Under the pieces are notes generated by a model. It made no database searches, had not been told where the DNA came from, and saw nothing but the letters and a program-made list of their open reading frames with translations. A program made the position numbers and the translations under genes. From the sequence record MT679221.1: a stretch of DNA of 64,000 nt; one strand, given 5' to 3'. Shown piece after piece: positions 21,035-35,753 of this stretch (the stretch's first letter is position 1; each line of letters opens with the position of its first letter).

Positions 21035-22072
21035 GTGAAACAATATCTTGAGATGATGCAAAACATTCTGGATGAGGGTCATGTTAAAGGCGATCGTACT
21101 GGAACAGGGACGCTTTCTGTCTTTGGACGCCAGATGCGTTTTGATTTGCGTAAAGGTTTCCCGCTAGTCACGACTAAGAAACTCCACCTGCGTTCTATTA
21201 TCCACGAACTGCTGTGGTTCCTTAGTGGGGATACCAACACCAAATATCTGGAAGATAACGGCGTTACCATTTGGCGGGAGTGGCAAGATGAAAATGGGAA
21301 CCTTGGCCCCCTGTATGGTGCACAATGGAGACGTTGGAAAGATGCGAAACTGGTTCCTAAGAAAAATGCAGCTTTACTCGAGAAACTGCAAGCTGCTGGA
21401 TACGCGGATTATGGCGACGCGGACGACGGTTCACAAATGTTCGATGCGCGTGTACTTCTGAAAGAGCACGACCAGATCTCTAAGGTGATTGACCAGCTGC
21501 GTAACGATCCTGACAGTCGCCGTATTATTGTCAGCGCATGGAACGTGGGTGAGTTGGATCAAATGGCGTTAGCTCCGTGTCATGCGTTCTTTCAGTTCTA
21601 CACTCGTGAGCTGTCCATCGACGAGCGTCTTGATTGGTTTGAAAAGAACCTTCCAGATCAATTTAACGATTCCCGCTTTAGTAATGAAGCTGTAGCAGAT
21701 GACGCAGTGTTCCACGTTGAGATGGACGCACTTGAAATACCTCGCCGCATTCTTTCATGTCAGCTCTATCAACGCAGTGCGGATTTTTTCCTCGGCGTGC
21801 CGTTCAACATCGCGTCTTACGCATTACTCGTGCACATGGTTGCCCAGCAGGTTAACATGGTGCCGGGCGATTTCATTTGGACGGGCGGTGACACACATCT
21901 CTACTCTAATCATCTGGAGCAGGCCAAGCTGCAGCTGACGCGTGAGCCGTTACCTTTACCGAAACTGATCATCAAGCGTAAACCGGAATCTATCTTCGAT
22001 TATAAATTCGAAGATTTTGAGATCGTTGGGTATCAGTCTCATGAAAAAATATCTGCACCGGTGGCTATCTAA
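21035..22072 (+). CDS. thyA: Thymidylate synthase with two insertions
   Basis: [56 protein letters not shown] and C-terminal PVAI. Confidence 0.97.
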
Positions 22073-22870: not shown

Positions 22871-23638
22871 ATGATGAAACTCTTTGCGTTCTCCGATGAA
22901 TTCTACACGGTGGAATTCGACGACTACGAATACGGGTTATTAGGGGCCGTCGACATGGAGGACGCCAAACGGCAGCTTCCTACTAGCGAAATAGAAATCA
23001 TTGAGATTGGGGAAACTAATCTTAGTGGGATTTTGATGCTGGGGCGGCGACCACGACCTGCGGAACCTGAGCAGGAAAGAGAGCAAGCGCAAGCGATTTG
23101 TCTGGTTTATGAGCCGATAGACCCTGCAGCGATAGCGAAGGTAGTCGATACGCTACGGCCACAGATTGGCGTCGCGATTGAAAATTATCGCTGGGCTCGT
23201 TTCCCAGGCGATACGCCGATATTTTCGAATAAGCACTGGTTGTTATGCATCAACAACGACACGATAATGGTACCTTTAACAGGGGAGAAGAATTTTGAAG
23301 ATAACTTCGTCCCTGGCGAAGAGTCTGTTATCTTCGAGTATACCCATGTCATCGGAAAGCCGAGCTTCTACCAAGTTCTGATTGATGTCTTGACTCACGT
23401 CGGTCGAACCATCGAATACCACTACTGGGCACGCCATGCGCGTTTTAAATGGTTCTCGTTGACGTACGTCGAAGGTTGGGAACGTGTTGTTGAAAAGATT
23501 GACGGGCGCTATGAGCAGATTTGGTTCCTGAACCCGGCATTCCGTGAAGAATTACCCGCATGGGTAAAAGAAGAGGCGAGCAAGCTGACGGTTGGCTTTA
23601 CTAAGCAGGGCGCGCCGTATATGGTTAACTACAAATAA
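22871..23638 (+). CDS. Hypothetical protein
   Basis: 255 aa, starts 1 nt after the previous stop codon. Confidence 0.75.
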   Translation: MMKLFAFSDEFYTVEFDDYEYGLLGAVDMEDAKRQLPTSEIEIIEIGETNLSGILMLGRRPRPAEPEQEREQAQAICLVYEPIDPAAIAKVVDTLRPQIGVAIENYRWARFPGDTPIFSNKHWLLCINNDTIMVPLTGEKNFEDNFVPGEESVIFEYTHVIGKPSFYQVLIDVLTHVGRTIEYHYWARHARFKWFSLTYVEGWERVVEKIDGRYEQIWFLNPAFREELPAWVKEEASKLTVGFTKQGAPYMVNYK

Positions 23639-23649
23639 GGTGAAAACAG

Positions 23650-24129
23650 ATGTCTATAACTCGGATCGATTATCGCGCCGTAGTAAAAGAACTGTCCAAA
23701 GGTCTTATCGAACTGGACTCCGATGAAGCCCGTAGCTGTGGCTTTTTACCGCATATTGCACTGAGCGAGTTCCGCACTATCCGCTATGGCGCTGGTCGTC
23801 AGAAAGGCGTTACAACACACGCTGTTGATATGTCAGCAAAGTTCCACGGCAGCGTTCTGTATCTGGTTCACAATGAAGCGTTACGGAGCGAAGTGGTGGA
23901 GAAATTCCATGAAAAAGCCGCTGGGAACGGTTGGCTGACCGTGCACTGTAACTACTTGCCTGAGGGTTGGAAACGCGCGACGGGTGCTGGTATATCCGGC
24001 TACGAGAAATTCGGCTTGGTTATTGTCGACGAAGCGGGTTTCTTCTTCAACAAGTTCAGTTACGATAAAATCTATCGCAGTCTGGTCGACGTAGTAACGC
24101 CAGACGTTGTGATACACCTGATTAATTAA
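23650..24129 (+). CDS. Minimal P-loop NTPase-like protein
   Basis: Walker A-like GAGRQKGVTT (Lys replaced by Val) and Walker B LVIVDEAGFF. Confidence 0.62.
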   Translation: MSITRIDYRAVVKELSKGLIELDSDEARSCGFLPHIALSEFRTIRYGAGRQKGVTTHAVDMSAKFHGSVLYLVHNEALRSEVVEKFHEKAAGNGWLTVHCNYLPEGWKRATGAGISGYEKFGLVIVDEAGFFFNKFSYDKIYRSLVDVVTPDVVIHLIN

Positions 24130-24141
24130 GTAGAGGAAAAT

Positions 24142-24330
24142 ATGGCTGGAGAACTCGGTCGTGGGCAAGCCACAACGTTCATGTATCGCGATGGGTTAGG
24201 TGCGGATGTAAACATGTCTCCGGATGACGAGATGGTTATCCCTGGACTTGACCCTGACGCAGGTGTGGAAGGTGGCGTTGACCCGTCGAAAGACGACGAC
24301 AACTGCACCGGTGGTGCGTGCAAGATTTAA
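24142..24330 (+). CDS. 62-aa peptide resembling the C-terminal redox tail of ribonucleotide reductase alpha (NrdA)
   Basis: Own GAGG SD and ATG; ends DDDNCTGGACKI-stop (compare E. coli NrdA ...DDGCESGACKI); terminator immediately follows. Confidence 0.72.
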   Translation: MAGELGRGQATTFMYRDGLGADVNMSPDDEMVIPGLDPDAGVEGGVDPSKDDDNCTGGACKI

Positions 24331-24339
24331 AATACGTAT

Positions 24340-24375
24340 TAGGGTGTCCATATGGACACCCTACTTATTTTTTTT
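24340..24375 (+). terminator. Intrinsic terminator
   Basis: TAGGGTGTCC-ATAT-GGACACCCTA followed by a T-tract. Confidence 0.9.
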
Positions 24376-24393
24376 GTTTAAGGAGCTATCAAA

Positions 24394-25335
24394 ATGGGCG
24401 ACCGTTTCATTATCCAGATTCCGTATAACGTTATTGTTGAACCTAACCAGTACCTGACACAGATTAATGAGCTTCTGGCTGGATTCTGCCAACGTCAGTT
24501 TGTTGAACCGTGGTCCTTTGAGAAACTGTACACTCTGTGCGTGAACAGTGAAACCGGTCACACTTACGTCGAAGGTAAAGTCTTCACAGGCGACCAGAGT
24601 TTGGAAATAAATGATTTCGAAATGCCGTGGACGTTGGAAGGTGTCGAGTATCGTGGTACGGTTGATCGTCCGCGCTACGTACCTTTGTACACCATCCCAC
24701 AATGTATTACTAACGTTATGGGTTGGTCTAAAGCGCGTGGTATTCTGGATAACGGCGTCTGGTATAGCCAAGCCACCAAACTCTACGAAGAAGACGGTGA
24801 AGCGGCAACCGGTATCAGTAAAAACAAACGTCGTTACATCATGGACGGTATCGGTGATGCTCTGGTCGTGTTGGTTAACTTGATGGAACTCATTAAGTTT
24901 GACTCAACCGATATCACCACATACGTCAACGACGCACGTTCAAAGAAACCACACGCCGGGAACAGTCATTACCTGTTCCACAAAATGCGTTTCCATCTTA
25001 CTTGTGCGGTTGATTATATCTGGGATCAGGCAGGCATCGACTCAGCTAAGCAACTCGAATATAAACACTTCGAAAACAGCGACGCGGTAATGATCGAATG
25101 TCACTTCGCTCAGATGGTCGAATACGCCAATGCGCTGGCTAATGCGTACGATATGACTCTGGAACAGTGCTTCTCTCTGGCATGGGATGAAATCAAAGAC
25201 CGTAAGGGTTTCCTGAACGCGGACGGTATCTTCGTTAAAGAAGCAGACATGACCGCTGCTGAGATCGAAGTAAACGGTTCCCTTACTGTAAAAGATGAGG
25301 CGTTTACCGATGGCGAAGAAACTGTTCACGGTTGA
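24394..25335 (+). CDS. MazG-like nucleotide pyrophosphohydrolase with N-terminal extension and internal insertion
   Basis: W..ARGI...Q.TKLYEEDGEA..I.K....DGIGDALVVLVNL ... LEQCFSLAWDEIKDRKG.....FVKE is the phage MazG-like signature. Confidence 0.85.
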   Translation: MGDRFIIQIPYNVIVEPNQYLTQINELLAGFCQRQFVEPWSFEKLYTLCVNSETGHTYVEGKVFTGDQSLEINDFEMPWTLEGVEYRGTVDRPRYVPLYTIPQCITNVMGWSKARGILDNGVWYSQATKLYEEDGEAATGISKNKRRYIMDGIGDALVVLVNLMELIKFDSTDITTYVNDARSKKPHAGNSHYLFHKMRFHLTCAVDYIWDQAGIDSAKQLEYKHFENSDAVMIECHFAQMVEYANALANAYDMTLEQCFSLAWDEIKDRKGFLNADGIFVKEADMTAAEIEVNGSLTVKDEAFTDGEETVHG

Positions 25336-28631: not shown

Positions 28632-31600
28632 TTAGCTTGCTTTCCGACTTACGTTTAACGACGGTGTCGGTTGGGTTATTTCCTGCCTGCGTGCAGCTGA
28701 GCCTGGAGGAGGCACATTTGCCGCTTGCTGGATACTACCACCACGCGTGTCGTTTGCTGCTCTCGGATTTGATTTCAAAATATCACGAATCTCTTTCAAG
28801 TAATCGCGAGACTGAATCAGTACCTTGAGCTGCTGAACATCTATCGGGTCACCATTCAGCGTTGGCGTCGATGCTGTAGCATCAGAAGTTGGAGCGGCAA
28901 CTGGACGTGCTGCTGCGTTAACCTGCGCTTCCGCGCCTGCTTTCACTTTAGCAACATCCGTTGCAGACAATCCTTCTGCTGCAGCTTGCGACGCTACGGT
29001 TTCGGCCGTTGTTGAGGCATCGGATGTTCCGGAACCACCTGTGGTTGGTGTAGGTGCTGCTGGTCCTACATTACCTGCGGCGGTAGCCATTGCATCTTGT
29101 GCCGCCATGGCCCCTTTCTGCGTCAATGCGTCATCACGACGATTAGCATTATCTGCTGGCAGGTTATCTGCTGGCGACAGACTCGGATCATTAGCGGCCG
29201 GTGCACCCATTGCTGCTGCCGGGTTGGTTGGTGAATTAGGCGACAAGCCTGCAACCATATCCTTCGTCTTACTCGGATCGGCAGCGACTTCGTTGGCGGA
29301 AATTGCGCCCATGCGGCGGTTCAGTTCCTGAATGACCCCGTCTACGCTACGTATACGACCGTTGCTGTAGAAGACGTTGGCATTCCCTCTCAGTATTGCA
29401 GATGTAATCCCAGGAGCACTTGATGCCGCCATATTCGGATTACGCTTCCATGCTTCCAAGAACTTCTTACCGCCGCCTGCACCCAAGAAGTGGTACAGAT
29501 AAGCCACGGCTGGAGGTGGTGCTTTACCACCCAGGTCACGCTGTGCTTGTTGGATGTTGTCACGAATGAACTGTACACCCAATATAGCATTCGCCCACGG
29601 GTCCATTTGGTTAACACGCGGAATACCAAACTTCCGCGAATACCCCTGCATCATCCCGTTCCACGTGCCGTCAACAAACTGGAACAACCCAGACGCCGAA
29701 GCATACGGGTTTTTAGCGGTGTAGTTAAATCCGGACTCCGCTTTAGCCATTGCCAACGCCACTGCAGGTGGCACGCCCATCATGTTCGCCGCATCGGTAA
29801 TCAATGCTTTGATATTCGGAACGTTCAACGCACCCTTTCTACCCAACATTTCTATCGGGTATTTTTCAGCCAGCGACTTATAATCACCGTCTTTCACATC
29901 ACTCAGGTTAATCGAAGACGAACCAGTGGTCATTGCAGCGTAGTTCCGCACACCACCAACCGCATCGACGACTTGACCCAAGTTACCCGGCACACCACCA
30001 CTCGTACCCGACGGGATGTAGCCTGAGGCGCGAGCACCGTCAGATGACAAAGAATCTCCCGAACTGATGTTCGAGTCTTCTTCATCTTCACCGGTAACTT
30101 CCAGAGAACTGCGGTTCTTGTTACGATCCTTCCAGCGTGCACGCTTGCCATTATTTTTAATGGCTTTAATCATGTTACGCACGGCAAGGTCAGCTTCTTT
30201 TGACAACAGCTTCAACGTTTCCAGCTCGGCTTTGATAGACGACGGATTAGTGTTAGCATCGCCCCCTAATGGGTTGATATTCACTTCCCACACCGACTGT
30301 CTTATACCGCCTTTCAAGCTGTAGGCAGTTGACATCATCAGACTGATTTCGTACAGGTAGCCGCCGGTCAGTTTCAAGTTCAGCGGATCGGCTGTTGGCA
30401 GGTAACGCTTCACCCCAACCAAATACGTCATGAATACCGGTAAGAAACGGTCAAAGAACCACCGTTTCAAACGGTCTTCTTTCGGTGTACCGATAGCGTC
30501 TGGAACCATCGAGGCGATTGCTTTCTTCCAATCTCCTTTGTAGCTTGCGGTTTTCACGTCAATGTCTTTGATGACGTTCTTCTCGAATACCGTAATCAAC
30601 GTGCGTGTGGCGTTGTCGATGGTGGTAAAACCATAAGTCTTCCAACGTACCGACTCCATCGCATTCATGTCTTTCTGGTCGAGCACCGCATTCCAGTCTA
30701 CCTGAATCTGAACCTGCTCTGTTCCGTCTTCCCAACCCTCTACCTTCGCCAGATTTTTATTACGTTCGTTATCCAACTGTCCAAGTTTGTTGATAGCTTC
30801 ATCAACACCCGCGGACTTAATCCCCTCCACGGCCGGTGCCATTCCGTACTTACGTGCTTTCTTATCGTCCATTCTGAACTTGATTGCACGCTCGACTTCA
30901 TTCTGCACTTCCATAACCTCTTCACCGCTCAAAAACTCCTTCGGTGTAAAGGTTACGACGTCCCAGGCCTTCGAGAAGAAACCTTGGTTGACTTTGCGTG
31001 GGTCAGTTAACGAAGAGAACGCTTTTGCATCCTTAGTCATCTTCATTTTGTTGAAGAGTGTCTGCATGTCCTCTTTCGATACTTTCTTCGCATCGCCGAC
31101 GTCAGCCAACTGGATACTATTCGGCATTGATTTCAGTGCCGTAATCCAACGGAGATAAATCGGAATGAAGCGCTGAAGCATAAACGCTTGGAAGGCCAAC
31201 ATCTCGCCTTTTTCCTCAACGTTGATACCGAACCCTTCAGCTAACTTCTGAACGTCTTTTCCACTTAGCCCACGGAGACTGGCTTGGCCATCTTCCGCGT
31301 AAGACACATACTCACGCAATGCGTCTTCTAAGTAACGCGCTTTCGCCCCGTCGTCCGACGACCACTTATCGTAATCACGGAAACCGTACTGAGCTAAACG
31401 CATCTTATCCAGGTACTGGGTATAGGTAGTCGTTGCGATTTTGTACGCGGCGTAACCTGCCGCGGCGATCGCACCACCGATAAGAATTGCCGGCCAGCCC
31501 ACCGCGGTCACGACGGCAGATGCCGCAGTTGCCACAGCGGACACCGCGGGTGCCGCCAAGCGGGTTACTGCGAACTTACCAACATTCCACGCAGCCTTCC

Positions 31601-34600
31601 CTAAAAGGCCTACGGGTTTTAACACACCCCATTTCGTGATAGAACCGAGTATATTACCCACAGTTCCCAAGATACTGACGATGGGACCGATGATAGGTAA
31701 GCCCTTCACCATATCCCACAGACCGCCAGATTTCCCTTTGGAGCCCTGCGCTTTCTCTTTCTTCTCCTTACGTTTCTCACGCCAACGTTTGAAGAAGTTA
31801 AAGTAGTCGCGTTTTTCATCACCTTCAGGCGGCTTGTTACGTTTACCGAACTTCGCAAACATGGTACGAATAATGCCATCGTCACCACCTGCACGGGATA
31901 CTGATTCGCGCATGGTGTTAAACCACGACATCTCTTGCAAGCCAATCATTCGGTCCAAGCGTTCGAATAACCTTGCGCCTGCAGACTTGGCGGCATTCTT
32001 CCCTTTGTTAATAACCCTCCCTGCTGCATCACGGGCGGTCTCAAGGTCTTCCTTCGCATCGCCGTAGACTTTACGGCCAGAAAGGCCACCTTTCGCGTTC
32101 AAATGACTGCGATAAAACTCAGCAACATCATCATCACGTCCAGCCAACCGACGTTCAACTTCGTAACGTGTAGCAATGTCGTGCCGTGCTCCACGATATC
32201 CATCGAGCATATCCCCAGCCCGGCCTCGGAAACCACTGAACCAACCACGCAGGCGGTCACGTCCACGACCAAAGAACGCTTTTGTTCTTGACCAACGTCC
32301 ACCAAAACGTTCAGACAACGACGATTTCGCACGATTATACGCCCCGCGTACTGCACGACCGATCGTACTACCACCGCCACCGACACCCTTCTCCATTTCT
32401 TCTGTCCAACTTTCGTCTTCCGGTTCGCCCGGTAAACGTTGGTTCAACAGTTTATAGATACGGATAAGGATGTGGTTGGTTTTCTTGCCGGTTGATGAGA
32501 AGAGACTGAAACCACCACCCCCACCATCTTTACGGCCTTTCCACCAACGCGTCAGTGGGTTGTCGGTAATCATGTCTTTCAGACGATCGACACCACGTTT
32601 CGCAAAACCGAGCACTTTACCCGGTAAGCTCGTTACGCGGTTGAACGCTTTCTGGAGACGTGTCTTTTCTTCGCCTTCCGGAATCTCGTTCAGCCAGTCC
32701 TTAATCTTACCAACGATGCTGCCTGCTTTCGGTGACAGGAAATCCAGGAACCGTTTCGGTAGCTTAGCCACCTTATTAAAGCCTAAGCCAATCTTACTGG
32801 CCAGACCTTGGGTCAGTGCTTGGATTTTCCCGCCTTTATAGTAGCGGAGTTTACCCGCAGCGGCTAAGTCAGCGGCTGCTAATACCAGATTACCTGCGGA
32901 GTCAACAATATCACTCCCCAGTTTGATGTCGTCCAGCGTTTTCAGCTGAACCATTTTACCATCAATGACCTGATAGTATTCCCCAGCTTCCAGACGTGCA
33001 CCTTGCAGAACAACGTTACCGTGGTCATCGTAAATGTCGCGGATACCCAGTAGTCCTTTACCGAAGGAACTTACCGCTTCAAAGCCCCCACGGACACTAC
33101 CGCTGATAAGGCCACGCATCCGGGTTAAGAAACCAGGACCTTCTCCGCCACCCATCCCTGCGATTTTACCGCGTGCCCAGCCACCGAACTGATTCAGTTT
33201 ATTCCAGGCACCCTTAACACCACGTTTCGCAAAGCCGCCGATTCCTGTTGCGGTGTCGAACAACACGCCACCCCAACGACGAATAAGCCCATCCTCACCG
33301 ATGATAATACGACGGCGTTTACCGCCACCGCTACCACCGCCAGGACGAGGTGGACCCATTTCTTCATCACCAGAACCAGCACCTCCTGCTAACGAAGCCA
33401 GGAGAACCCCTTCTTCGTCCATACTTCTGACGTGCTCCAGAATTTTCTGGAGGGTGTCACTGTTGTTGTTACCCCGAATCGCTTCGATGATGCCGTCAAA
33501 GTTATTCCGTGGTGCTTCTTCGCCACGGTTACGTTGGCTCAGCAATTCAACAAAGTTAGTCGAGGTTTCACCGTAGAGAACTGCGGCTAACTGCCGAGGC
33601 GACATTCCGCGGCCTTTACCACCGCCACGTAAAGCCGGCGGCAACGACGTGTCATCGGCACCACCACTTGCCCCTTGGTTCATTCGGCGCAGATAGTCGC
33701 CTAACGCCGAACCGTTTTGCAGCTTACGTTGAATCTCCTGCTCACGAGTCAATGCACGACCGCTGCGTGTCTTACCCATTGCCAAGTCATTAAACAAGGT
33801 ATAGGGATCGGACAGGTCTTTATCCGCGCCGAAAGTGTCACTCTTCGCGTCGTAGTTAAAGATACCCGCATCGCGCAATGCTCGCTCACCGTAAATATTC
33901 ACCGCCTCGTCGATAATTGCCTGACGTTGGGTGATAGATGACTGCACTGTGGAGATTTTGCGGGCCAGCTCGTTACTTAATTCGTTGCTACCACCGACCA
34001 AGCTATCAGAATGCCCCTGTAACGCTTCCTTAATGCGTTCTGCGGCGTTTCCTGGCATATACCGATGAAGATGCATCGGGTCTTTCAGAATCGCTTCTAC
34101 GTCGAATGCACGACCCTGCGAGGCACGTGACTCGATATAGTCGGCGAGATGCTGTCGATCCTTCTGCGAGAGCGTTTTGCCGCGGTCAACAAAATCCACA
34201 GTGCTGTTAATGGAATTTTGGAGACGCAGGCGTTGTTCATCGTTTGCAACCGCCTTGCGTACGCGGTTACCGACCACTTTACGGTCTACGAACCCACGAC
34301 TGGTGATGTCGTATTCCAGGTCGGCATGTTCGCCATAACCCCGACGAACAGATTTGTTAATCTCTGCCAGCCAGGCAGGAATAACTTCAACCAGGCTAAG
34401 ATATGCTTTACGGTCAAATTTCGCCGAACGGCTTAACGTTTCGCCATTACGTTCGTCAAGGAAGGCTTTCTCACGGTTTAACGGTTGGACAATACCGAGT
34501 TCATTCAATACCCGGAACAAATCCGCCAACGGCCCTTGCGTTTCGCCTGCGATGGCTGAGTTAGAGATAGAGGAAAGATTACCAAAGGTGAACGCGCCTT

Positions 34601-35753
34601 TCTGCAGGCGTTTCATTACCTCTGGATTTTTCTCCATCTCCTCGCGAGTCCATTTCTGGAGTTTCTCGATTTGTGGACCGAGTAGTTTCTTCGCAAGGAA
34701 TCCACTACCCCACGCAGTTGCTTTATCGCGAGCATTTGTTTTGCGACGTTCAGCAGTCAACGAAGAGCTGTCGCTCATGCCGAAATCGTCTTCAACGCCC
34801 ATGCCGAGAACAGATTCTAACAAACCGCGACCTTCGCCAAATATACCAGAAATTTTCTTCTTGGTATTTTCGCGAATCATGTCCATAAACCCGTCAGCAT
34901 ACCGCAACGGGTTCATCCATTCCGCAGCCTGGCGTTTAACGTTCGCCCAACGGACTTCTGAGAAATCTTCCTTCGCGTAATCCGGCAATGCCGTGTTCTT
35001 CACGATGGCTTCTAAAGCAGGCGTATTACGATCGAACTCCGACTGCTTCATCTTCACGATGTCTTGGATGGCAAACAGGGTACGGTATTGCAGTTCGAGT
35101 TTCTTACGCTCGATGTTTAAGAATACCCCGCGGCTTAACCCGGTTAGCAGGTTAATGTCTTTCGCCATCCCAATCATGGTTTGGTGCATTGCATCCGCAC
35201 GCATCTCTTTGATGCTGTCGCGGAGCTTATCCTCTACCATGCTGTCCTGCAGCTGACGTTGTTCTTCGGCGTCCTTTGGCACACCTGAGAAAACGTCGCC
35301 CAGTTCACGATCCATCAACGCCTGATTAGGATCGTAATTTTGGTAATCCAACTGGTCAGATTTTGACCACTTGTCGAAGCGCTTAGTAACTGCATCCGGC
35401 AAGTATTTCTTCATCGTCGGACCGAGTTGGCGTGCTTGCATCTTCAGCGTGCGCTCGGTCTTCTCAAGCTCCCCTTTCGTATGGGCGTAAATGTCCTTTG
35501 CTGCAGCTGCCGCTGACTGATAGCCCTCGTATGCATCAGCTGCCGGCTTAGGCATCCCCTTGAGGATAACTTGGTCACGTTTCCCTTCTGGCCAGATAGT
35601 TGACAACGCCGACTTCCTGGCAACATTCAGGGTACTGAGTATCGGGCTTCGTTTTTTCTCGTCTTTGGGACGGGGTGGTTCACCGAAATCATCCCAGTCG
35701 TCGAGTCTATCTAAATCGATATCATCGAAACCGTCTTTGCCTCTTTTTGCCAT
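28632..35753 (-). CDS. Giant tail protein (tape measure / tail-associated) with lytic transglycosylase domain (phiKZ gp181-like)
   Basis: 2373 aa; SLT motif ALAMAKAESGFNYTAKNPYASASGLFQFVDGTW; hydrophobic Ala/Gly segment; long helical regions. Confidence 0.92.
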   Translation of the reverse strand: MAKRGKDGFDDIDLDRLDDWDDFGEPPRPKDEKKRSPILSTLNVARKSALSTIWPEGKRDQVILKGMPKPAADAYEGYQSAAAAAKDIYAHTKGELEKTERTLKMQARQLGPTMKKYLPDAVTKRFDKWSKSDQLDYQNYDPNQALMDRELGDVFSGVPKDAEEQRQLQDSMVEDKLRDSIKEMRADAMHQTMIGMAKDINLLTGLSRGVFLNIERKKLELQYRTLFAIQDIVKMKQSEFDRNTPALEAIVKNTALPDYAKEDFSEVRWANVKRQAAEWMNPLRYADGFMDMIRENTKKKISGIFGEGRGLLESVLGMGVEDDFGMSDSSSLTAERRKTNARDKATAWGSGFLAKKLLGPQIEKLQKWTREEMEKNPEVMKRLQKGAFTFGNLSSISNSAIAGETQGPLADLFRVLNELGIVQPLNREKAFLDERNGETLSRSAKFDRKAYLSLVEVIPAWLAEINKSVRRGYGEHADLEYDITSRGFVDRKVVGNRVRKAVANDEQRLRLQNSINSTVDFVDRGKTLSQKDRQHLADYIESRASQGRAFDVEAILKDPMHLHRYMPGNAAERIKEALQGHSDSLVGGSNELSNELARKISTVQSSITQRQAIIDEAVNIYGERALRDAGIFNYDAKSDTFGADKDLSDPYTLFNDLAMGKTRSGRALTREQEIQRKLQNGSALGDYLRRMNQGASGGADDTSLPPALRGGGKGRGMSPRQLAAVLYGETSTNFVELLSQRNRGEEAPRNNFDGIIEAIRGNNNSDTLQKILEHVRSMDEEGVLLASLAGGAGSGDEEMGPPRPGGGSGGGKRRRIIIGEDGLIRRWGGVLFDTATGIGGFAKRGVKGAWNKLNQFGGWARGKIAGMGGGEGPGFLTRMRGLISGSVRGGFEAVSSFGKGLLGIRDIYDDHGNVVLQGARLEAGEYYQVIDGKMVQLKTLDDIKLGSDIVDSAGNLVLAAADLAAAGKLRYYKGGKIQALTQGLASKIGLGFNKVAKLPKRFLDFLSPKAGSIVGKIKDWLNEIPEGEEKTRLQKAFNRVTSLPGKVLGFAKRGVDRLKDMITDNPLTRWWKGRKDGGGGGFSLFSSTGKKTNHILIRIYKLLNQRLPGEPEDESWTEEMEKGVGGGGSTIGRAVRGAYNRAKSSLSERFGGRWSRTKAFFGRGRDRLRGWFSGFRGRAGDMLDGYRGARHDIATRYEVERRLAGRDDDVAEFYRSHLNAKGGLSGRKVYGDAKEDLETARDAAGRVINKGKNAAKSAGARLFERLDRMIGLQEMSWFNTMRESVSRAGGDDGIIRTMFAKFGKRNKPPEGDEKRDYFNFFKRWREKRKEKKEKAQGSKGKSGGLWDMVKGLPIIGPIVSILGTVGNILGSITKWGVLKPVGLLGKAAWNVGKFAVTRLAAPAVSAVATAASAVVTAVGWPAILIGGAIAAAGYAAYKIATTTYTQYLDKMRLAQYGFRDYDKWSSDDGAKARYLEDALREYVSYAEDGQASLRGLSGKDVQKLAEGFGINVEEKGEMLAFQAFMLQRFIPIYLRWITALKSMPNSIQLADVGDAKKVSKEDMQTLFNKMKMTKDAKAFSSLTDPRKVNQGFFSKAWDVVTFTPKEFLSGEEVMEVQNEVERAIKFRMDDKKARKYGMAPAVEGIKSAGVDEAINKLGQLDNERNKNLAKVEGWEDGTEQVQIQVDWNAVLDQKDMNAMESVRWKTYGFTTIDNATRTLITVFEKNVIKDIDVKTASYKGDWKKAIASMVPDAIGTPKEDRLKRWFFDRFLPVFMTYLVGVKRYLPTADPLNLKLTGGYLYEISLMMSTAYSLKGGIRQSVWEVNINPLGGDANTNPSSIKAELETLKLLSKEADLAVRNMIKAIKNNGKRARWKDRNKNRSSLEVTGEDEEDSNISSGDSLSSDGARASGYIPSGTSGGVPGNLGQVVDAVGGVRNYAAMTTGSSSINLSDVKDGDYKSLAEKYPIEMLGRKGALNVPNIKALITDAANMMGVPPAVALAMAKAESGFNYTAKNPYASASGLFQFVDGTWNGMMQGYSRKFGIPRVNQMDPWANAILGVQFIRDNIQQAQRDLGGKAPPPAVAYLYHFLGAGGGKKFLEAWKRNPNMAASSAPGITSAILRGNANVFYSNGRIRSVDGVIQELNRRMGAISANEVAADPSKTKDMVAGLSPNSPTNPAAAMGAPAANDPSLSPADNLPADNANRRDDALTQKGAMAAQDAMATAAGNVGPAAPTPTTGGSGTSDASTTAETVASQAAAEGLSATDVAKVKAGAEAQVNAAARPVAAPTSDATASTPTLNGDPIDVQQLKVLIQSRDYLKEIRDILKSNPRAANDTRGGSIQQAANVPPPGSAARRQEITQPTPSLNVSRKAS

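What the first reader, a model, noticed from the sequence alone, without database searches (positions are those of the whole stretch)
24142..24330. Free-standing copy of the ribonucleotide reductase C-terminal redox tail
Seen: a 62-aa ORF with its own GAGG SD, an acidic flexible body, the ending ...DDDNCTGGACKI-stop, and a terminator right after. Established: class Ia NrdA ends in a C-x4-C tail (E. coli ...DDGCESGACKI) that carries electrons from thioredoxin/glutaredoxin to the active-site disulfide. TTFMYRDG near the N-terminus also loosely echoes the NrdA YQNTRDG segment before the tail. No RNR catalytic domain lies upstream, where the gene is a P-loop protein. Inference: the phage makes the tail alone, either as a soluble redox shuttle that speeds re-reduction of host RNR and raises dNTP supply, or as a decoy for Trx/Grx. 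I know no description of such a gene.
Basis: partly seen in the sequence, partly recalled or inferred. Interest (0 to 1): 0.88.

Follow-up and report, generated by a model that had tools for sequence, protein, structure and literature searches.

The report
Free-standing ribonucleotide reductase tail protein
A giant Salmonella/Proteus phage that has no ribonucleotide reductase of its own encodes a conserved 62-residue acidic protein whose end copies the electron-carrying tail of the bacterial enzyme, so it most likely acts on the host enzyme that makes DNA building blocks.

Summary
The ORF is real (24142-24330, +; SPN3US gp234, annotated hypothetical). It has a GAGG five bases before the ATG and a terminator hairpin after the stop. 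Its last 15 residues match the E. coli NrdA tail at 10 of 15 positions, including both redox cysteines and the final Gly-Ala-Cys-Lys-Ile. Family profiles find class Ia NrdA in the PDB only at its extreme C-terminus.

It belongs to an undescribed family of 39-120-aa proteins, with no Pfam or NCBIfam model and only unknown-function PHROGs. Members occur in jumbo phages of Enterobacterales, in ~60-kb phages, and in Neisseria, Kingella and Moraxella chromosomes. The last eight residues are invariant in 29 distinct genes despite free synonymous change. SPN3US has no nrdA or nrdB.

In three phage lineages the gene lies among deoxynucleotide genes. In one metagenomic phage contig a catalytically complete NrdA lacks only its cysteine tail, and the gene just upstream, a deoxyribonucleotidase, carries the module instead.

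Best reading: a trans-acting RNR tail that shuttles electrons from thioredoxin or glutaredoxin to host NrdA. A decoy or a docking tag is not excluded. The 'TTFMYRDG' echo is chance. Function is inferred, not shown.

The parts
24133..24136 (+). Shine-Dalgarno GAGG, five bases before the start codon
   Evidence: Read directly from the sequence.
24142..24330 (+). 62-aa acidic ORF (SPN3US gp234 homolog), a free-standing RNR-alpha-tail protein; stop codon included
   Evidence: PHROG 38753 at E = 4e-46. Homologs in 72 phage records and in 65 clusters at 50% identity.
24142..24237 (+). Variable N-terminal half (residues 1-32), poorly conserved between genera
   Evidence: Alignments. pN/pS is about 1 against a close relative and about 0.35 against an Erwinia Seoulvirus. 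The echo of the NrdA body is chance.
24238..24327 (+). Conserved C-terminal module (residues 33-62): Pro-Gly-Leu block, Gly-Gly-Val-Asp block, acidic run, then the cysteine tail
   Evidence: tblastn matches in distant phages cover residues 33-62 only. There are no nonsynonymous changes among four close genomes, and pN/pS is 0.21 against pEa_SNUABM_29.
24304..24327 (+). Cys55-x4-Cys60-Lys-Ile, a copy of the NrdA redox cysteine pair at the extreme C-terminus
   Evidence: Seven of the eight positions (all but the second) are invariant in 29 of 29 distinct free-standing genes, with mixed synonymous codons. The module aligns to E. coli R1 residues 747-761 and to 7mdi_A residues 759-773.
24340..24373 (+). 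Intrinsic-terminator-like hairpin (10-bp stem, 4-nt loop) followed by a T-run
23650..24129 (+). Upstream neighbour gp233-like, 159 aa, a single RecA-like/P-loop domain of unknown role. It lies next to or near the tail gene in SPN3US-like phages.
   Evidence: PHROG 2586. Synteny. AlphaFold2 plus Foldseek.
22871..23638 (+). gp232-like protein, 255 aa (PHROG 10453, unknown function). In one relative it is fused in frame to the tail module.
24394..25335 (+). Downstream neighbour, a MazG-like nucleotide pyrophosphohydrolase, 313 aa
   Evidence: PHROG 7855 at E = 2e-145. A different MazG-like protein carries the tail module as a fusion (P0131).
21035..22072 (+). Thymidylate synthase, the start of the conserved deoxynucleotide gene block that contains the tail gene
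   Evidence: Annotation. Synteny in seven related loci.

Best explanation
gp234 is a diffusible copy of the C-terminal redox tail of class Ia ribonucleotide reductase alpha (NrdA).

Established background: after each turnover the active-site disulfide of NrdA is re-reduced by the two cysteines on its own flexible C-terminal tail, and thioredoxin or glutaredoxin then re-reduces that tail.

Inferred here: the phage peptide carries the same acidic run, the same Cys-x4-Cys pair and the same last three residues, so it can be reduced by the host redoxins and can enter the NrdA active site in trans. The phage has no RNR of its own, so the target is the host's NrdA. The expected effect is to feed electrons into host RNR, or keep it reduced, while the phage's thymidylate synthase, DHFR, dTMP kinase and MazG-like enzymes process the products. 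The conserved block just upstream of the tail, which NrdA lacks, would supply the binding that the covalent tether supplies in NrdA.

Shown: the sequence likeness, the conservation, the absence of phage RNR, the genomic association with dNTP genes, and one natural case of a tail-less NrdA beside a tail-bearing gene.

Inferred: binding partners, redox activity and direction of effect.
For: 1. Likeness to the NrdA tail. Ten of the last 15 residues are identical to E. coli NrdA, with z about 9 against shuffles. Family profiles hit NrdA in the PDB only at the extreme C-terminus. In 22 bacterial genomes the same eight-residue ending closes full-length NrdA.

2. Selection. Seven of the last eight residues are invariant in 29 of 29 distinct free-standing genes, with mixed synonymous codons. 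The C-terminal half has no nonsynonymous changes among close genomes.

3. No RNR in the phage. No RNR is annotated, and tblastn with NrdA and NrdB finds nothing in 240 kb except the 13-residue tail itself.

4. A natural split. In L046-L048 (three samples), NrdA is 70% identical to E. coli NrdA and keeps the equivalents of C225, N437, C439, E441, C462, Y730 and Y731. It stops at the equivalent of residue 742, without C754 or C759. The only tail motif in the locus is on the deoxyribonucleotidase gene 55 bases upstream.

5. Genomic context in unrelated phage lineages:
- SPN3US-like phages: thymidylate synthase ... tail, then MazG-like.
- ~60-kb phages: tail, then dNMP kinase, thymidylate synthase and dUTPase.
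- Fusions of the module to a MazG-like enzyme and to a 5'-3' deoxyribonucleotidase.

6. The established role of the tail is taken from PMC4078304, PMC9669993 and PMC11903788.
Against: - No experiment or expression data for this protein was found.
- Host NrdA already has its own tethered tail, so the benefit of extra free tails is not obvious.
- The tail-less NrdA arrangement was seen in one phage population only. All 80 related viral NrdA genes examined keep their own tails.
- NrdA is not retrieved at E <= 1e-3 in the 1.84-billion-protein profile search, so the likeness is a short motif and not demonstrable homology over a domain.
- Bacterial copies sit beside unrelated genes and lack paired NrdR boxes.
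- No redoxin gene was seen in the phage, although the test was weak.
Confidence: 0.5

Rival explanations
1. Decoy or inhibitor. The free tail competes with the host NrdA tail for thioredoxin or glutaredoxin, or for the NrdA active site. This would lower host RNR activity or divert the redoxins, in the way the small disordered yeast protein Sml1 interferes with tail-mediated regeneration of R1.
For: The motif evidence is the same as for the main explanation. The protein is small, acidic and rich in Gly and Pro, so it is probably disordered. In bacteria the gene coexists with an NrdA that has its own tail (7mdi_A; L006 and L015-L019), which would suit a regulator. The Sml1 precedent is known from the reference list seen and from my own knowledge of that paper.
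Against: The phage has no RNR but does keep thymidylate synthase, DHFR and dTMP kinase, all of which need RNR products. Blocking host RNR would therefore starve the phage unless host DNA is recycled. In L046 the module is the only tail available to an otherwise intact NrdA, which is hard to reconcile with a purely inhibitory part.
Confidence: 0.2
2. Docking tag or adaptor. The module is mainly a short binding motif for RNR alpha or for a redoxin. Alone or fused, it would bring phage deoxynucleotide enzymes (MazG-like, nucleotidase, gp232-like) to host RNR and build a phage-directed dNTP-synthesis complex, without necessarily performing redox chemistry.
For: The whole module is found fused to three different proteins: a 5'-3' deoxyribonucleotidase (P0108), a MazG-like enzyme (P0131) and a gp232-like protein (L056). 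Homologs of two of these are its neighbours in the window. The N-terminal half varies between genera, as an adaptor co-evolving with phage partners might.
Against: Both cysteines are invariant in 29 of 29 genes, which points to chemistry and not only binding. The fusions could simply reflect adjacency: in L056 the gp233 homolog is missing and the flanking genes are joined. No partner interaction has been shown.
Confidence: 0.15
3. Decaying remnant of an ancestral phage nrdA whose catalytic part was deleted, with no function left.
Against: The echo is chance. The module is under strong purifying selection. It is conserved in several phage genera and in bacteria as a small gene with its own ribosome-binding site. 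It also carries a conserved extra block that NrdA linkers lack. No relative examined has an intact nrdA at this position.
Confidence: 0.03
4. Unrelated cysteine peptide, such as a metal-binding peptide or a precursor of a modified peptide, whose ending resembles NrdA by convergence.
For: Two cysteines four residues apart in a small acidic peptide could bind metal. One family member is joined to an IscU N-terminal fragment.
Against: No maturase or transporter genes lie nearby. Identity to NrdA extends to 10 of 15 residues, including the acidic run and the last three residues. The context is deoxynucleotide metabolism in three phage lineages.
Confidence: 0.05

Closest known systems
C-terminal redox tail of class Ia RNR alpha (E. 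coli NrdA Cys754/Cys759)
   Same: Same acidic run, the same Cys-x4-Cys spacing and the same final Gly-Ala-Cys-Lys-Ile at the extreme C-terminus. Ten of the last 15 residues are identical.
   Different: It is not attached to a catalytic barrel. It is a separate 62-aa gene product in a genome without RNR. It also has a conserved Gly-Gly-Val-Asp block just upstream that NrdA linkers lack.
Fragmented 'genes-in-pieces' nrdA of Aeromonas phage Aeh1 (PMC3045599)
   Same: A phage RNR large subunit whose function is divided between separate gene products. The L046 contig found here is such a case for the tail.
   Different: In Aeh1 the catalytic body is split by a mobile endonuclease gene and both pieces lie together. 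Here only the roughly 30-residue tail module exists, the SPN3US-type genome has no other piece, and the module travels among unrelated phages and bacteria.
Sml1, Spd1, Hug1 and Dif1, small disordered RNR regulators of yeasts (title seen; details from my own knowledge)
   Same: Small proteins, probably disordered, that act on the large subunit and interfere with tail-mediated regeneration.
   Different: No sequence relationship was found (no Pfam hit). Those proteins do not copy the tail cysteines and are inhibitors. The direction of effect here is unknown and is more likely positive.
GrcA (YfiD), the free-standing glycyl-radical 'spare part' for pyruvate formate-lyase (my own knowledge, not tested here)
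   Same: A small stand-alone copy of the C-terminal functional module of a large radical enzyme that works in trans on that enzyme.
   Different: A different enzyme, fold and chemistry. GrcA replaces a damaged domain, whereas here the host tail is presumably intact.
Thioredoxin, glutaredoxin and NrdH redoxins, including phage-encoded ones
   Same: They would sit in the same electron path to RNR.
   Different: The peptide has no thioredoxin fold and no Cys-x2-Cys motif. It copies the substrate of those redoxins, not the redoxins.

Membership tests
Class Ia RNR alpha C-terminal redox tail (as a motif) | Two cysteines four residues apart within the last ten residues | tested here: met
   Cys55 and Cys60 of 62. 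They align with E. coli R1 Cys754 and Cys759.
Class Ia RNR alpha C-terminal redox tail (as a motif) | Acidic run before the first cysteine, and a terminal Gly-Ala-Cys-Lys-Ile as in gamma- and beta-proteobacterial NrdA | tested here: met
   The same ending was seen in 22 full-length bacterial NrdA, and phage NrdA end the same way with Ile or Leu last.
Class Ia RNR alpha (NrdA) protein family | Catalytic ten-stranded barrel with the active-site cysteines (Pfam Ribonuc_red_lgC/lgN) | tested here: not met
   The protein has 62 aa and no Pfam hit. No NrdA-like sequence occurs anywhere in the phage genome. It is therefore not a member of the NrdA family and only copies its tail.
Class Ia RNR alpha C-terminal redox tail (as a function) | Reduced by thioredoxin or glutaredoxin, and reduces the NrdA active-site disulfide | not testable with these tools
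   Indirect support only, from the tail-less NrdA beside a tail-bearing gene.
Split (genes-in-pieces) RNR | The remaining part of nrdA is encoded in the same genome | tested here: not met
   tblastn of NrdA and NrdB against all 240 kb of SPN3US and against the window finds nothing but the tail. The feature is met in L046, which is a different phage.
Sml1-type RNR inhibitors | Sequence relationship to Sml1, Spd1 or Hug1 | tested here: not met
   No Pfam family matches any of the 54 family members. No PDB sequence hit other than the NrdA tails and acidic peptides.
Sml1-type RNR inhibitors | Binds the large subunit and blocks regeneration | not testable with these tools
   No binding data were found.
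Thioredoxin-fold redoxins (Trx, Grx, NrdH) | Thioredoxin fold with a Cys-x2-Cys active site | tested here: not met
   The spacing is Cys-x4-Cys. There are no Pfam or PDB hits to redoxins.
Ribosomally made modified peptides (precursor) | Adjacent maturase or transport genes, with a conserved leader and a variable core | tested here: not met
   The neighbours are P-loop, MazG-like and thymidylate synthase genes. The conservation pattern is the opposite, with a variable N-terminus and an invariant C-terminus.

The most novel reading that the evidence does not exclude
A widespread, undescribed family of diffusible 'RNR tails'. These small proteins would carry electrons from thioredoxin or glutaredoxin to class Ia RNR in trans. 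They can replace the enzyme's own tail, as in the tail-less NrdA phage. RNR-less jumbo phages would use them to take over or boost the host's RNR, and Neisseria, Kingella and Moraxella would use them for a still unknown layer of RNR control.
Probability: 0.4. Interest if true: 0.85.

Novelty: new variant of a known kind. Interest (0 to 1): 0.72.

Why it matters
RNR is the only de novo source of DNA building blocks, and re-reduction through the alpha tail is part of every turnover. A natural, separately encoded tail would mean that this half-reaction can be supplied or manipulated in trans. That would be a new handle on RNR for phages that lack the enzyme, and possibly for bacteria such as Neisseria and Moraxella. 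It would also give function to a set of 'hypothetical' small genes in many jumbo phages, explain their fixed place among thymidylate synthase, MazG-like, dNMP kinase and dUTPase genes, and provide a natural peptide ligand for structural work on how the tail meets the redoxins and the active site.

Tried and rejected
- **N-terminal echo of the NrdA body.** The shuffle test shows chance.
- **Curated families.** Pfam, NCBIfam and single-sequence PDB searches with the peptide returned nothing.
- **Profile search of 1.84 billion proteins.** It returned only small proteins. No NrdA reached E <= 1e-3, so homology beyond the short motif cannot be claimed.
- **Regulation by NrdR in the bacterial copies.** Paired boxes were found upstream of 18 of 21 nrdA genes but upstream of 0 of 8 small genes. 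The box definition came from PMC13584703.
- **Likeness of the bacterial N-terminal part to the NrdB C-terminus.** This is not supported. The profile matches an acidic amphipathic helix peptide instead.
- **Fold of gp232-like protein.** The single-sequence AlphaFold2 model had pLDDT 48 and was unusable. The PDB profile search found nothing.
- **Fold of gp233-like protein.** It shows only a generic RecA-like P-loop fold with no link to RNR.
- **Search for more tail-less viral NrdA genes.** All 80 relatives of the L046 NrdA keep their tails.
- **Cultured phage with the nucleotidase-tail fusion.** None was found.
- **Phage-encoded redoxin.** No convincing Cys-x2-Cys candidate was seen, although the test was weak.
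- **Literature on gp234.** Nothing was found. The key Sml1 paper is not held in the library.

Full report
**1. Where the window comes from, and the ORF.** The region is 100% identical to Proteus phage 7 (MT679221.1) and 99.3% identical to Salmonella phage SPN3US, genus Seoulvirus. The ORF at 24142-24330 (+) encodes 62 residues and corresponds to SPN3US_0234, annotated 'hypothetical protein'. GAGG lies at 24133-24136, five bases before the ATG. A hairpin with a 10-bp stem at 24340-24363 followed by a T-run comes after the stop. The protein has pI 4.05, 13 acidic against 4 basic residues, 11 Gly and 4 Pro, so it is probably unstructured on its own.

**2. Likeness to the RNR tail.** I took no NrdA letters from memory for any test. 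The comparators came back from the tools.
- A profile of 54 family members searched against all PDB sequences gave 14 hits at E <= 10. Twelve were class Ia RNR alpha chains, each matched only at its last 13-15 residues: E. coli R1 residues 747-761 and 7mdi_A residues 761-773.
- With a profile of the bacterial-type members, 7mdi_A reached E = 0.017, again at its last 15 residues.
- I fetched E. coli nrdA from an annotated genome. Ten of the last 15 residues are identical to the phage peptide, including both cysteines, the preceding Asp-Asp and the final Gly-Ala-Cys-Lys-Ile.
- The last 16 residues score 56 against NrdA, compared with 22.6 +/- 3.5 for shuffles, and 0 of 2000 shuffles reach that score.
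Its Tyr is His in SPN3US itself.
- The likeness is a short motif. In a profile search of 1.84 billion proteins, no NrdA reached E <= 1e-3.

**3. The gene belongs to a family.**
- tblastn finds it in 72 phage records from Salmonella, Escherichia, Proteus, Erwinia and Cronobacter jumbo phages. In the distant ones only residues 33-62 match.
- Profile searches add many 39-120-aa proteins and give 65 clusters at 50% identity. The full-length members carry the module at the very C-terminus. A few entries continue past the module and look like frameshifted reads.
- No Pfam or NCBIfam model matches. PHROGs splits the family into four families of unknown function.
- Chromosomal copies occur in Neisseria, another Neisseriaceae, Kingella and Moraxella bovoculi, and in a proteobacterial contig between mnmG and a YfbR-like deoxynucleotidase gene.
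- In the same genome scan, 22 loci with the same eight-residue ending were full-length NrdA of 756-782 residues. Phage NrdA genes with their own tails were also found.

**4. Selection.** In 29 distinct free-standing genes, the positions counted back from the stop are as follows.

| Position from the stop | Residue counts | Codons |
|---|---|---|
| -8 | Cys 29/29 | TGC 16, TGT 13 |
| -7 | Ala 23, Thr 4, Ser 1, Glu 1 | not listed |
| -6 | Gly 29/29 | not listed |
| -5 | Gly 29/29 | not listed |
| -4 | Ala 29/29 | four codons |
| -3 | Cys 29/29 | not listed |
| -2 | Lys 29/29 | AAA 20, AAG 9 |
| -1 | Ile 29/29 | ATT 17, ATC 12 |

Further upstream, Gly at -19 is present in 27 of 29 genes and Asp at -16 in 20 of 29. 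This block is absent from NrdA linkers. Within Seoulvirus the C-terminal half has no nonsynonymous change among four close genomes and pN/pS of 0.21 against an Erwinia member. The N-terminal half is close to neutral among close relatives. The reading frame on the + strand is therefore the selected one, and a remnant without function is excluded.

**5. The phage has no RNR.** The five pieces of the SPN3US record carry no RNR annotation. They do carry thymidylate synthase, DHFR, dTMP kinase and a MazG-like gene. tblastn with a bacterial NrdA and NrdB against the whole genome and the window finds only chance matches and the 13-residue tail. No convincing redoxin motif was seen, although that test was weak.

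**6. Genomic context.**
- In seven SPN3US-like loci the order is thymidylate synthase, gp230, (gp231), gp232, gp233, tail, MazG-like, gp236.
- In one 237-kb contig the gp233 homolog is missing and the gp232-like protein is joined in frame to the tail module.
- In ~60-kb phages the tail gene is followed by dNMP kinase, thymidylate synthase and dUTPase genes.
- In a 28-kb phage contig it follows the terminase and portal genes.
- One tail-bearing protein lies next to an integrase.
- The module is also fused to a MazG-like enzyme, P0131.
- None of 15 viral loci with free tails has nrdA or nrdB within 10 kb.

**7. The most telling locus.** P0108 is a 5'-3' deoxyribonucleotidase-like protein with the module at its C-terminus. 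Its gene lies 55 bases upstream of nrdA and nrdB, beside a DHFR gene, in contigs from three samples. That NrdA is 70% identical to E. coli NrdA. It has a 263-residue insertion directly before the Cys439 equivalent, which is probably an intein. It keeps the equivalents of C225, N437, C439, E441, C462, Y730 and Y731, but it stops at the equivalent of residue 742, so it has neither C754 nor C759. The only tail motif in the locus is the one on the nucleotidase. Here, then, the tail is supplied from another polypeptide. This is the best available argument that the module works productively in trans. The arrangement is rare, because 80 related viral NrdA genes all keep their own tails.

**8. Mechanism.** It is established that the active-site disulfide of class I RNR is reduced by the cysteine pair on the flexible alpha tail, which thioredoxins or glutaredoxins then reduce (PMC4078304 abstract; PMC9669993; PMC11903788). 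From this I infer that gp234 is reduced by the host redoxins and delivers electrons to host NrdA in trans, supporting dNTP supply for a phage that brings the downstream enzymes but not RNR (confidence about 0.5). Rivals are a decoy or inhibitor in the manner of Sml1 (0.2), a docking tag that gathers phage dNTP enzymes on host RNR (0.15), an unrelated cysteine peptide (0.05) and a dead remnant (0.03). Two things remain unexplained: why bacteria with a tailed NrdA keep a free tail, and what the extra Gly-Gly-Val-Asp block binds. The bacterial genes have no paired NrdR boxes, whereas 18 of 21 nrdA genes do.

**9. Neighbouring genes.** The upstream 159-aa protein models as a single RecA-like P-loop domain (pLDDT 67; best Foldseek matches RadD, UvsW and eIF4A domain 1, E about 2e-3, TM 0.46). 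The gp232-like protein could not be modelled (pLDDT 48) and has no PDB sequence relative.

**10. Novelty.** The tail itself is textbook. Split phage nrdA genes are known (PMC3045599), as are small RNR regulators (title seen). I found no description of a separately encoded tail in an RNR-less virus that belongs to a conserved family also present in bacteria. The library is incomplete, so a description elsewhere cannot be excluded. I rate it a new variant of a known kind, with interest 0.72.

**11. Declaration of slips.** No full-length consensus, repaired or ancestral sequence was built. In this report I give column counts and name residues only from sequences that the tools returned.

Noticed in passing
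L056:6520-8414: In a 237-kb jumbo-phage contig the thymidylate synthase homolog matches in three separated pieces, so the gene is interrupted, perhaps by introns or inteins.
   Followed up: no
L046:1944-4970: The tail-less phage NrdA carries a 263-residue insertion directly before the catalytic Cys439 equivalent, with a weak Pfam intein hit.
   Followed up: partly
protein P0092 (metagenomic, 89 aa): The first ~50 residues of an IscU/NifU_N domain are joined to the tail module. IscU-like domains in long class II RNR C-termini are reported in PMC9669993. It is unknown whether this is a link or an assembly chimera.
   Followed up: no
window 23600-24900, compared with records LR535901-LR535913: Several SPFM phage records match this region only in 14-18 short pieces and give broken small ORFs for this gene. 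This looks like error-rich assemblies and not real gene loss.
   Followed up: no
proteins P0151 and P0032: Contigs of jumbo-phage size (240,822 and 223,835 bp) carrying these phage genes are deposited as Escherichia coli and Salmonella enterica sequences.
   Followed up: no
L167:586-2521: A 111-aa tail-bearing protein lies next to an AlpA-like regulator and a tyrosine integrase, so the module also rides on integrative elements.
   Followed up: no
window 28632-35753 (- strand): A 2373-residue protein is annotated 'tail fiber protein' in RefSeq. A homolog in L052 has a lytic transglycosylase (SLT) domain. It is more likely a tail or cell-puncturing protein with a lysin domain.
   Followed up: no
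L004:5147-5632 (Cronobacter phage CR5): In CR5 the gene order differs: tail, then an 'Arn.3-like' gene, then the gp233 homolog, then MazG-like. The tail gene also overlaps its downstream neighbour by 13 bases.
   Followed up: partly
bacterial small proteins, e.g. L006:8001-8132: The N-terminal half of the bacterial members is an acidic amphipathic-helix-like motif that matches a Pex19 N-terminal peptide in the PDB (E = 0.054). This suggests a second short binding motif. Its partner is unknown.
   Followed up: partly
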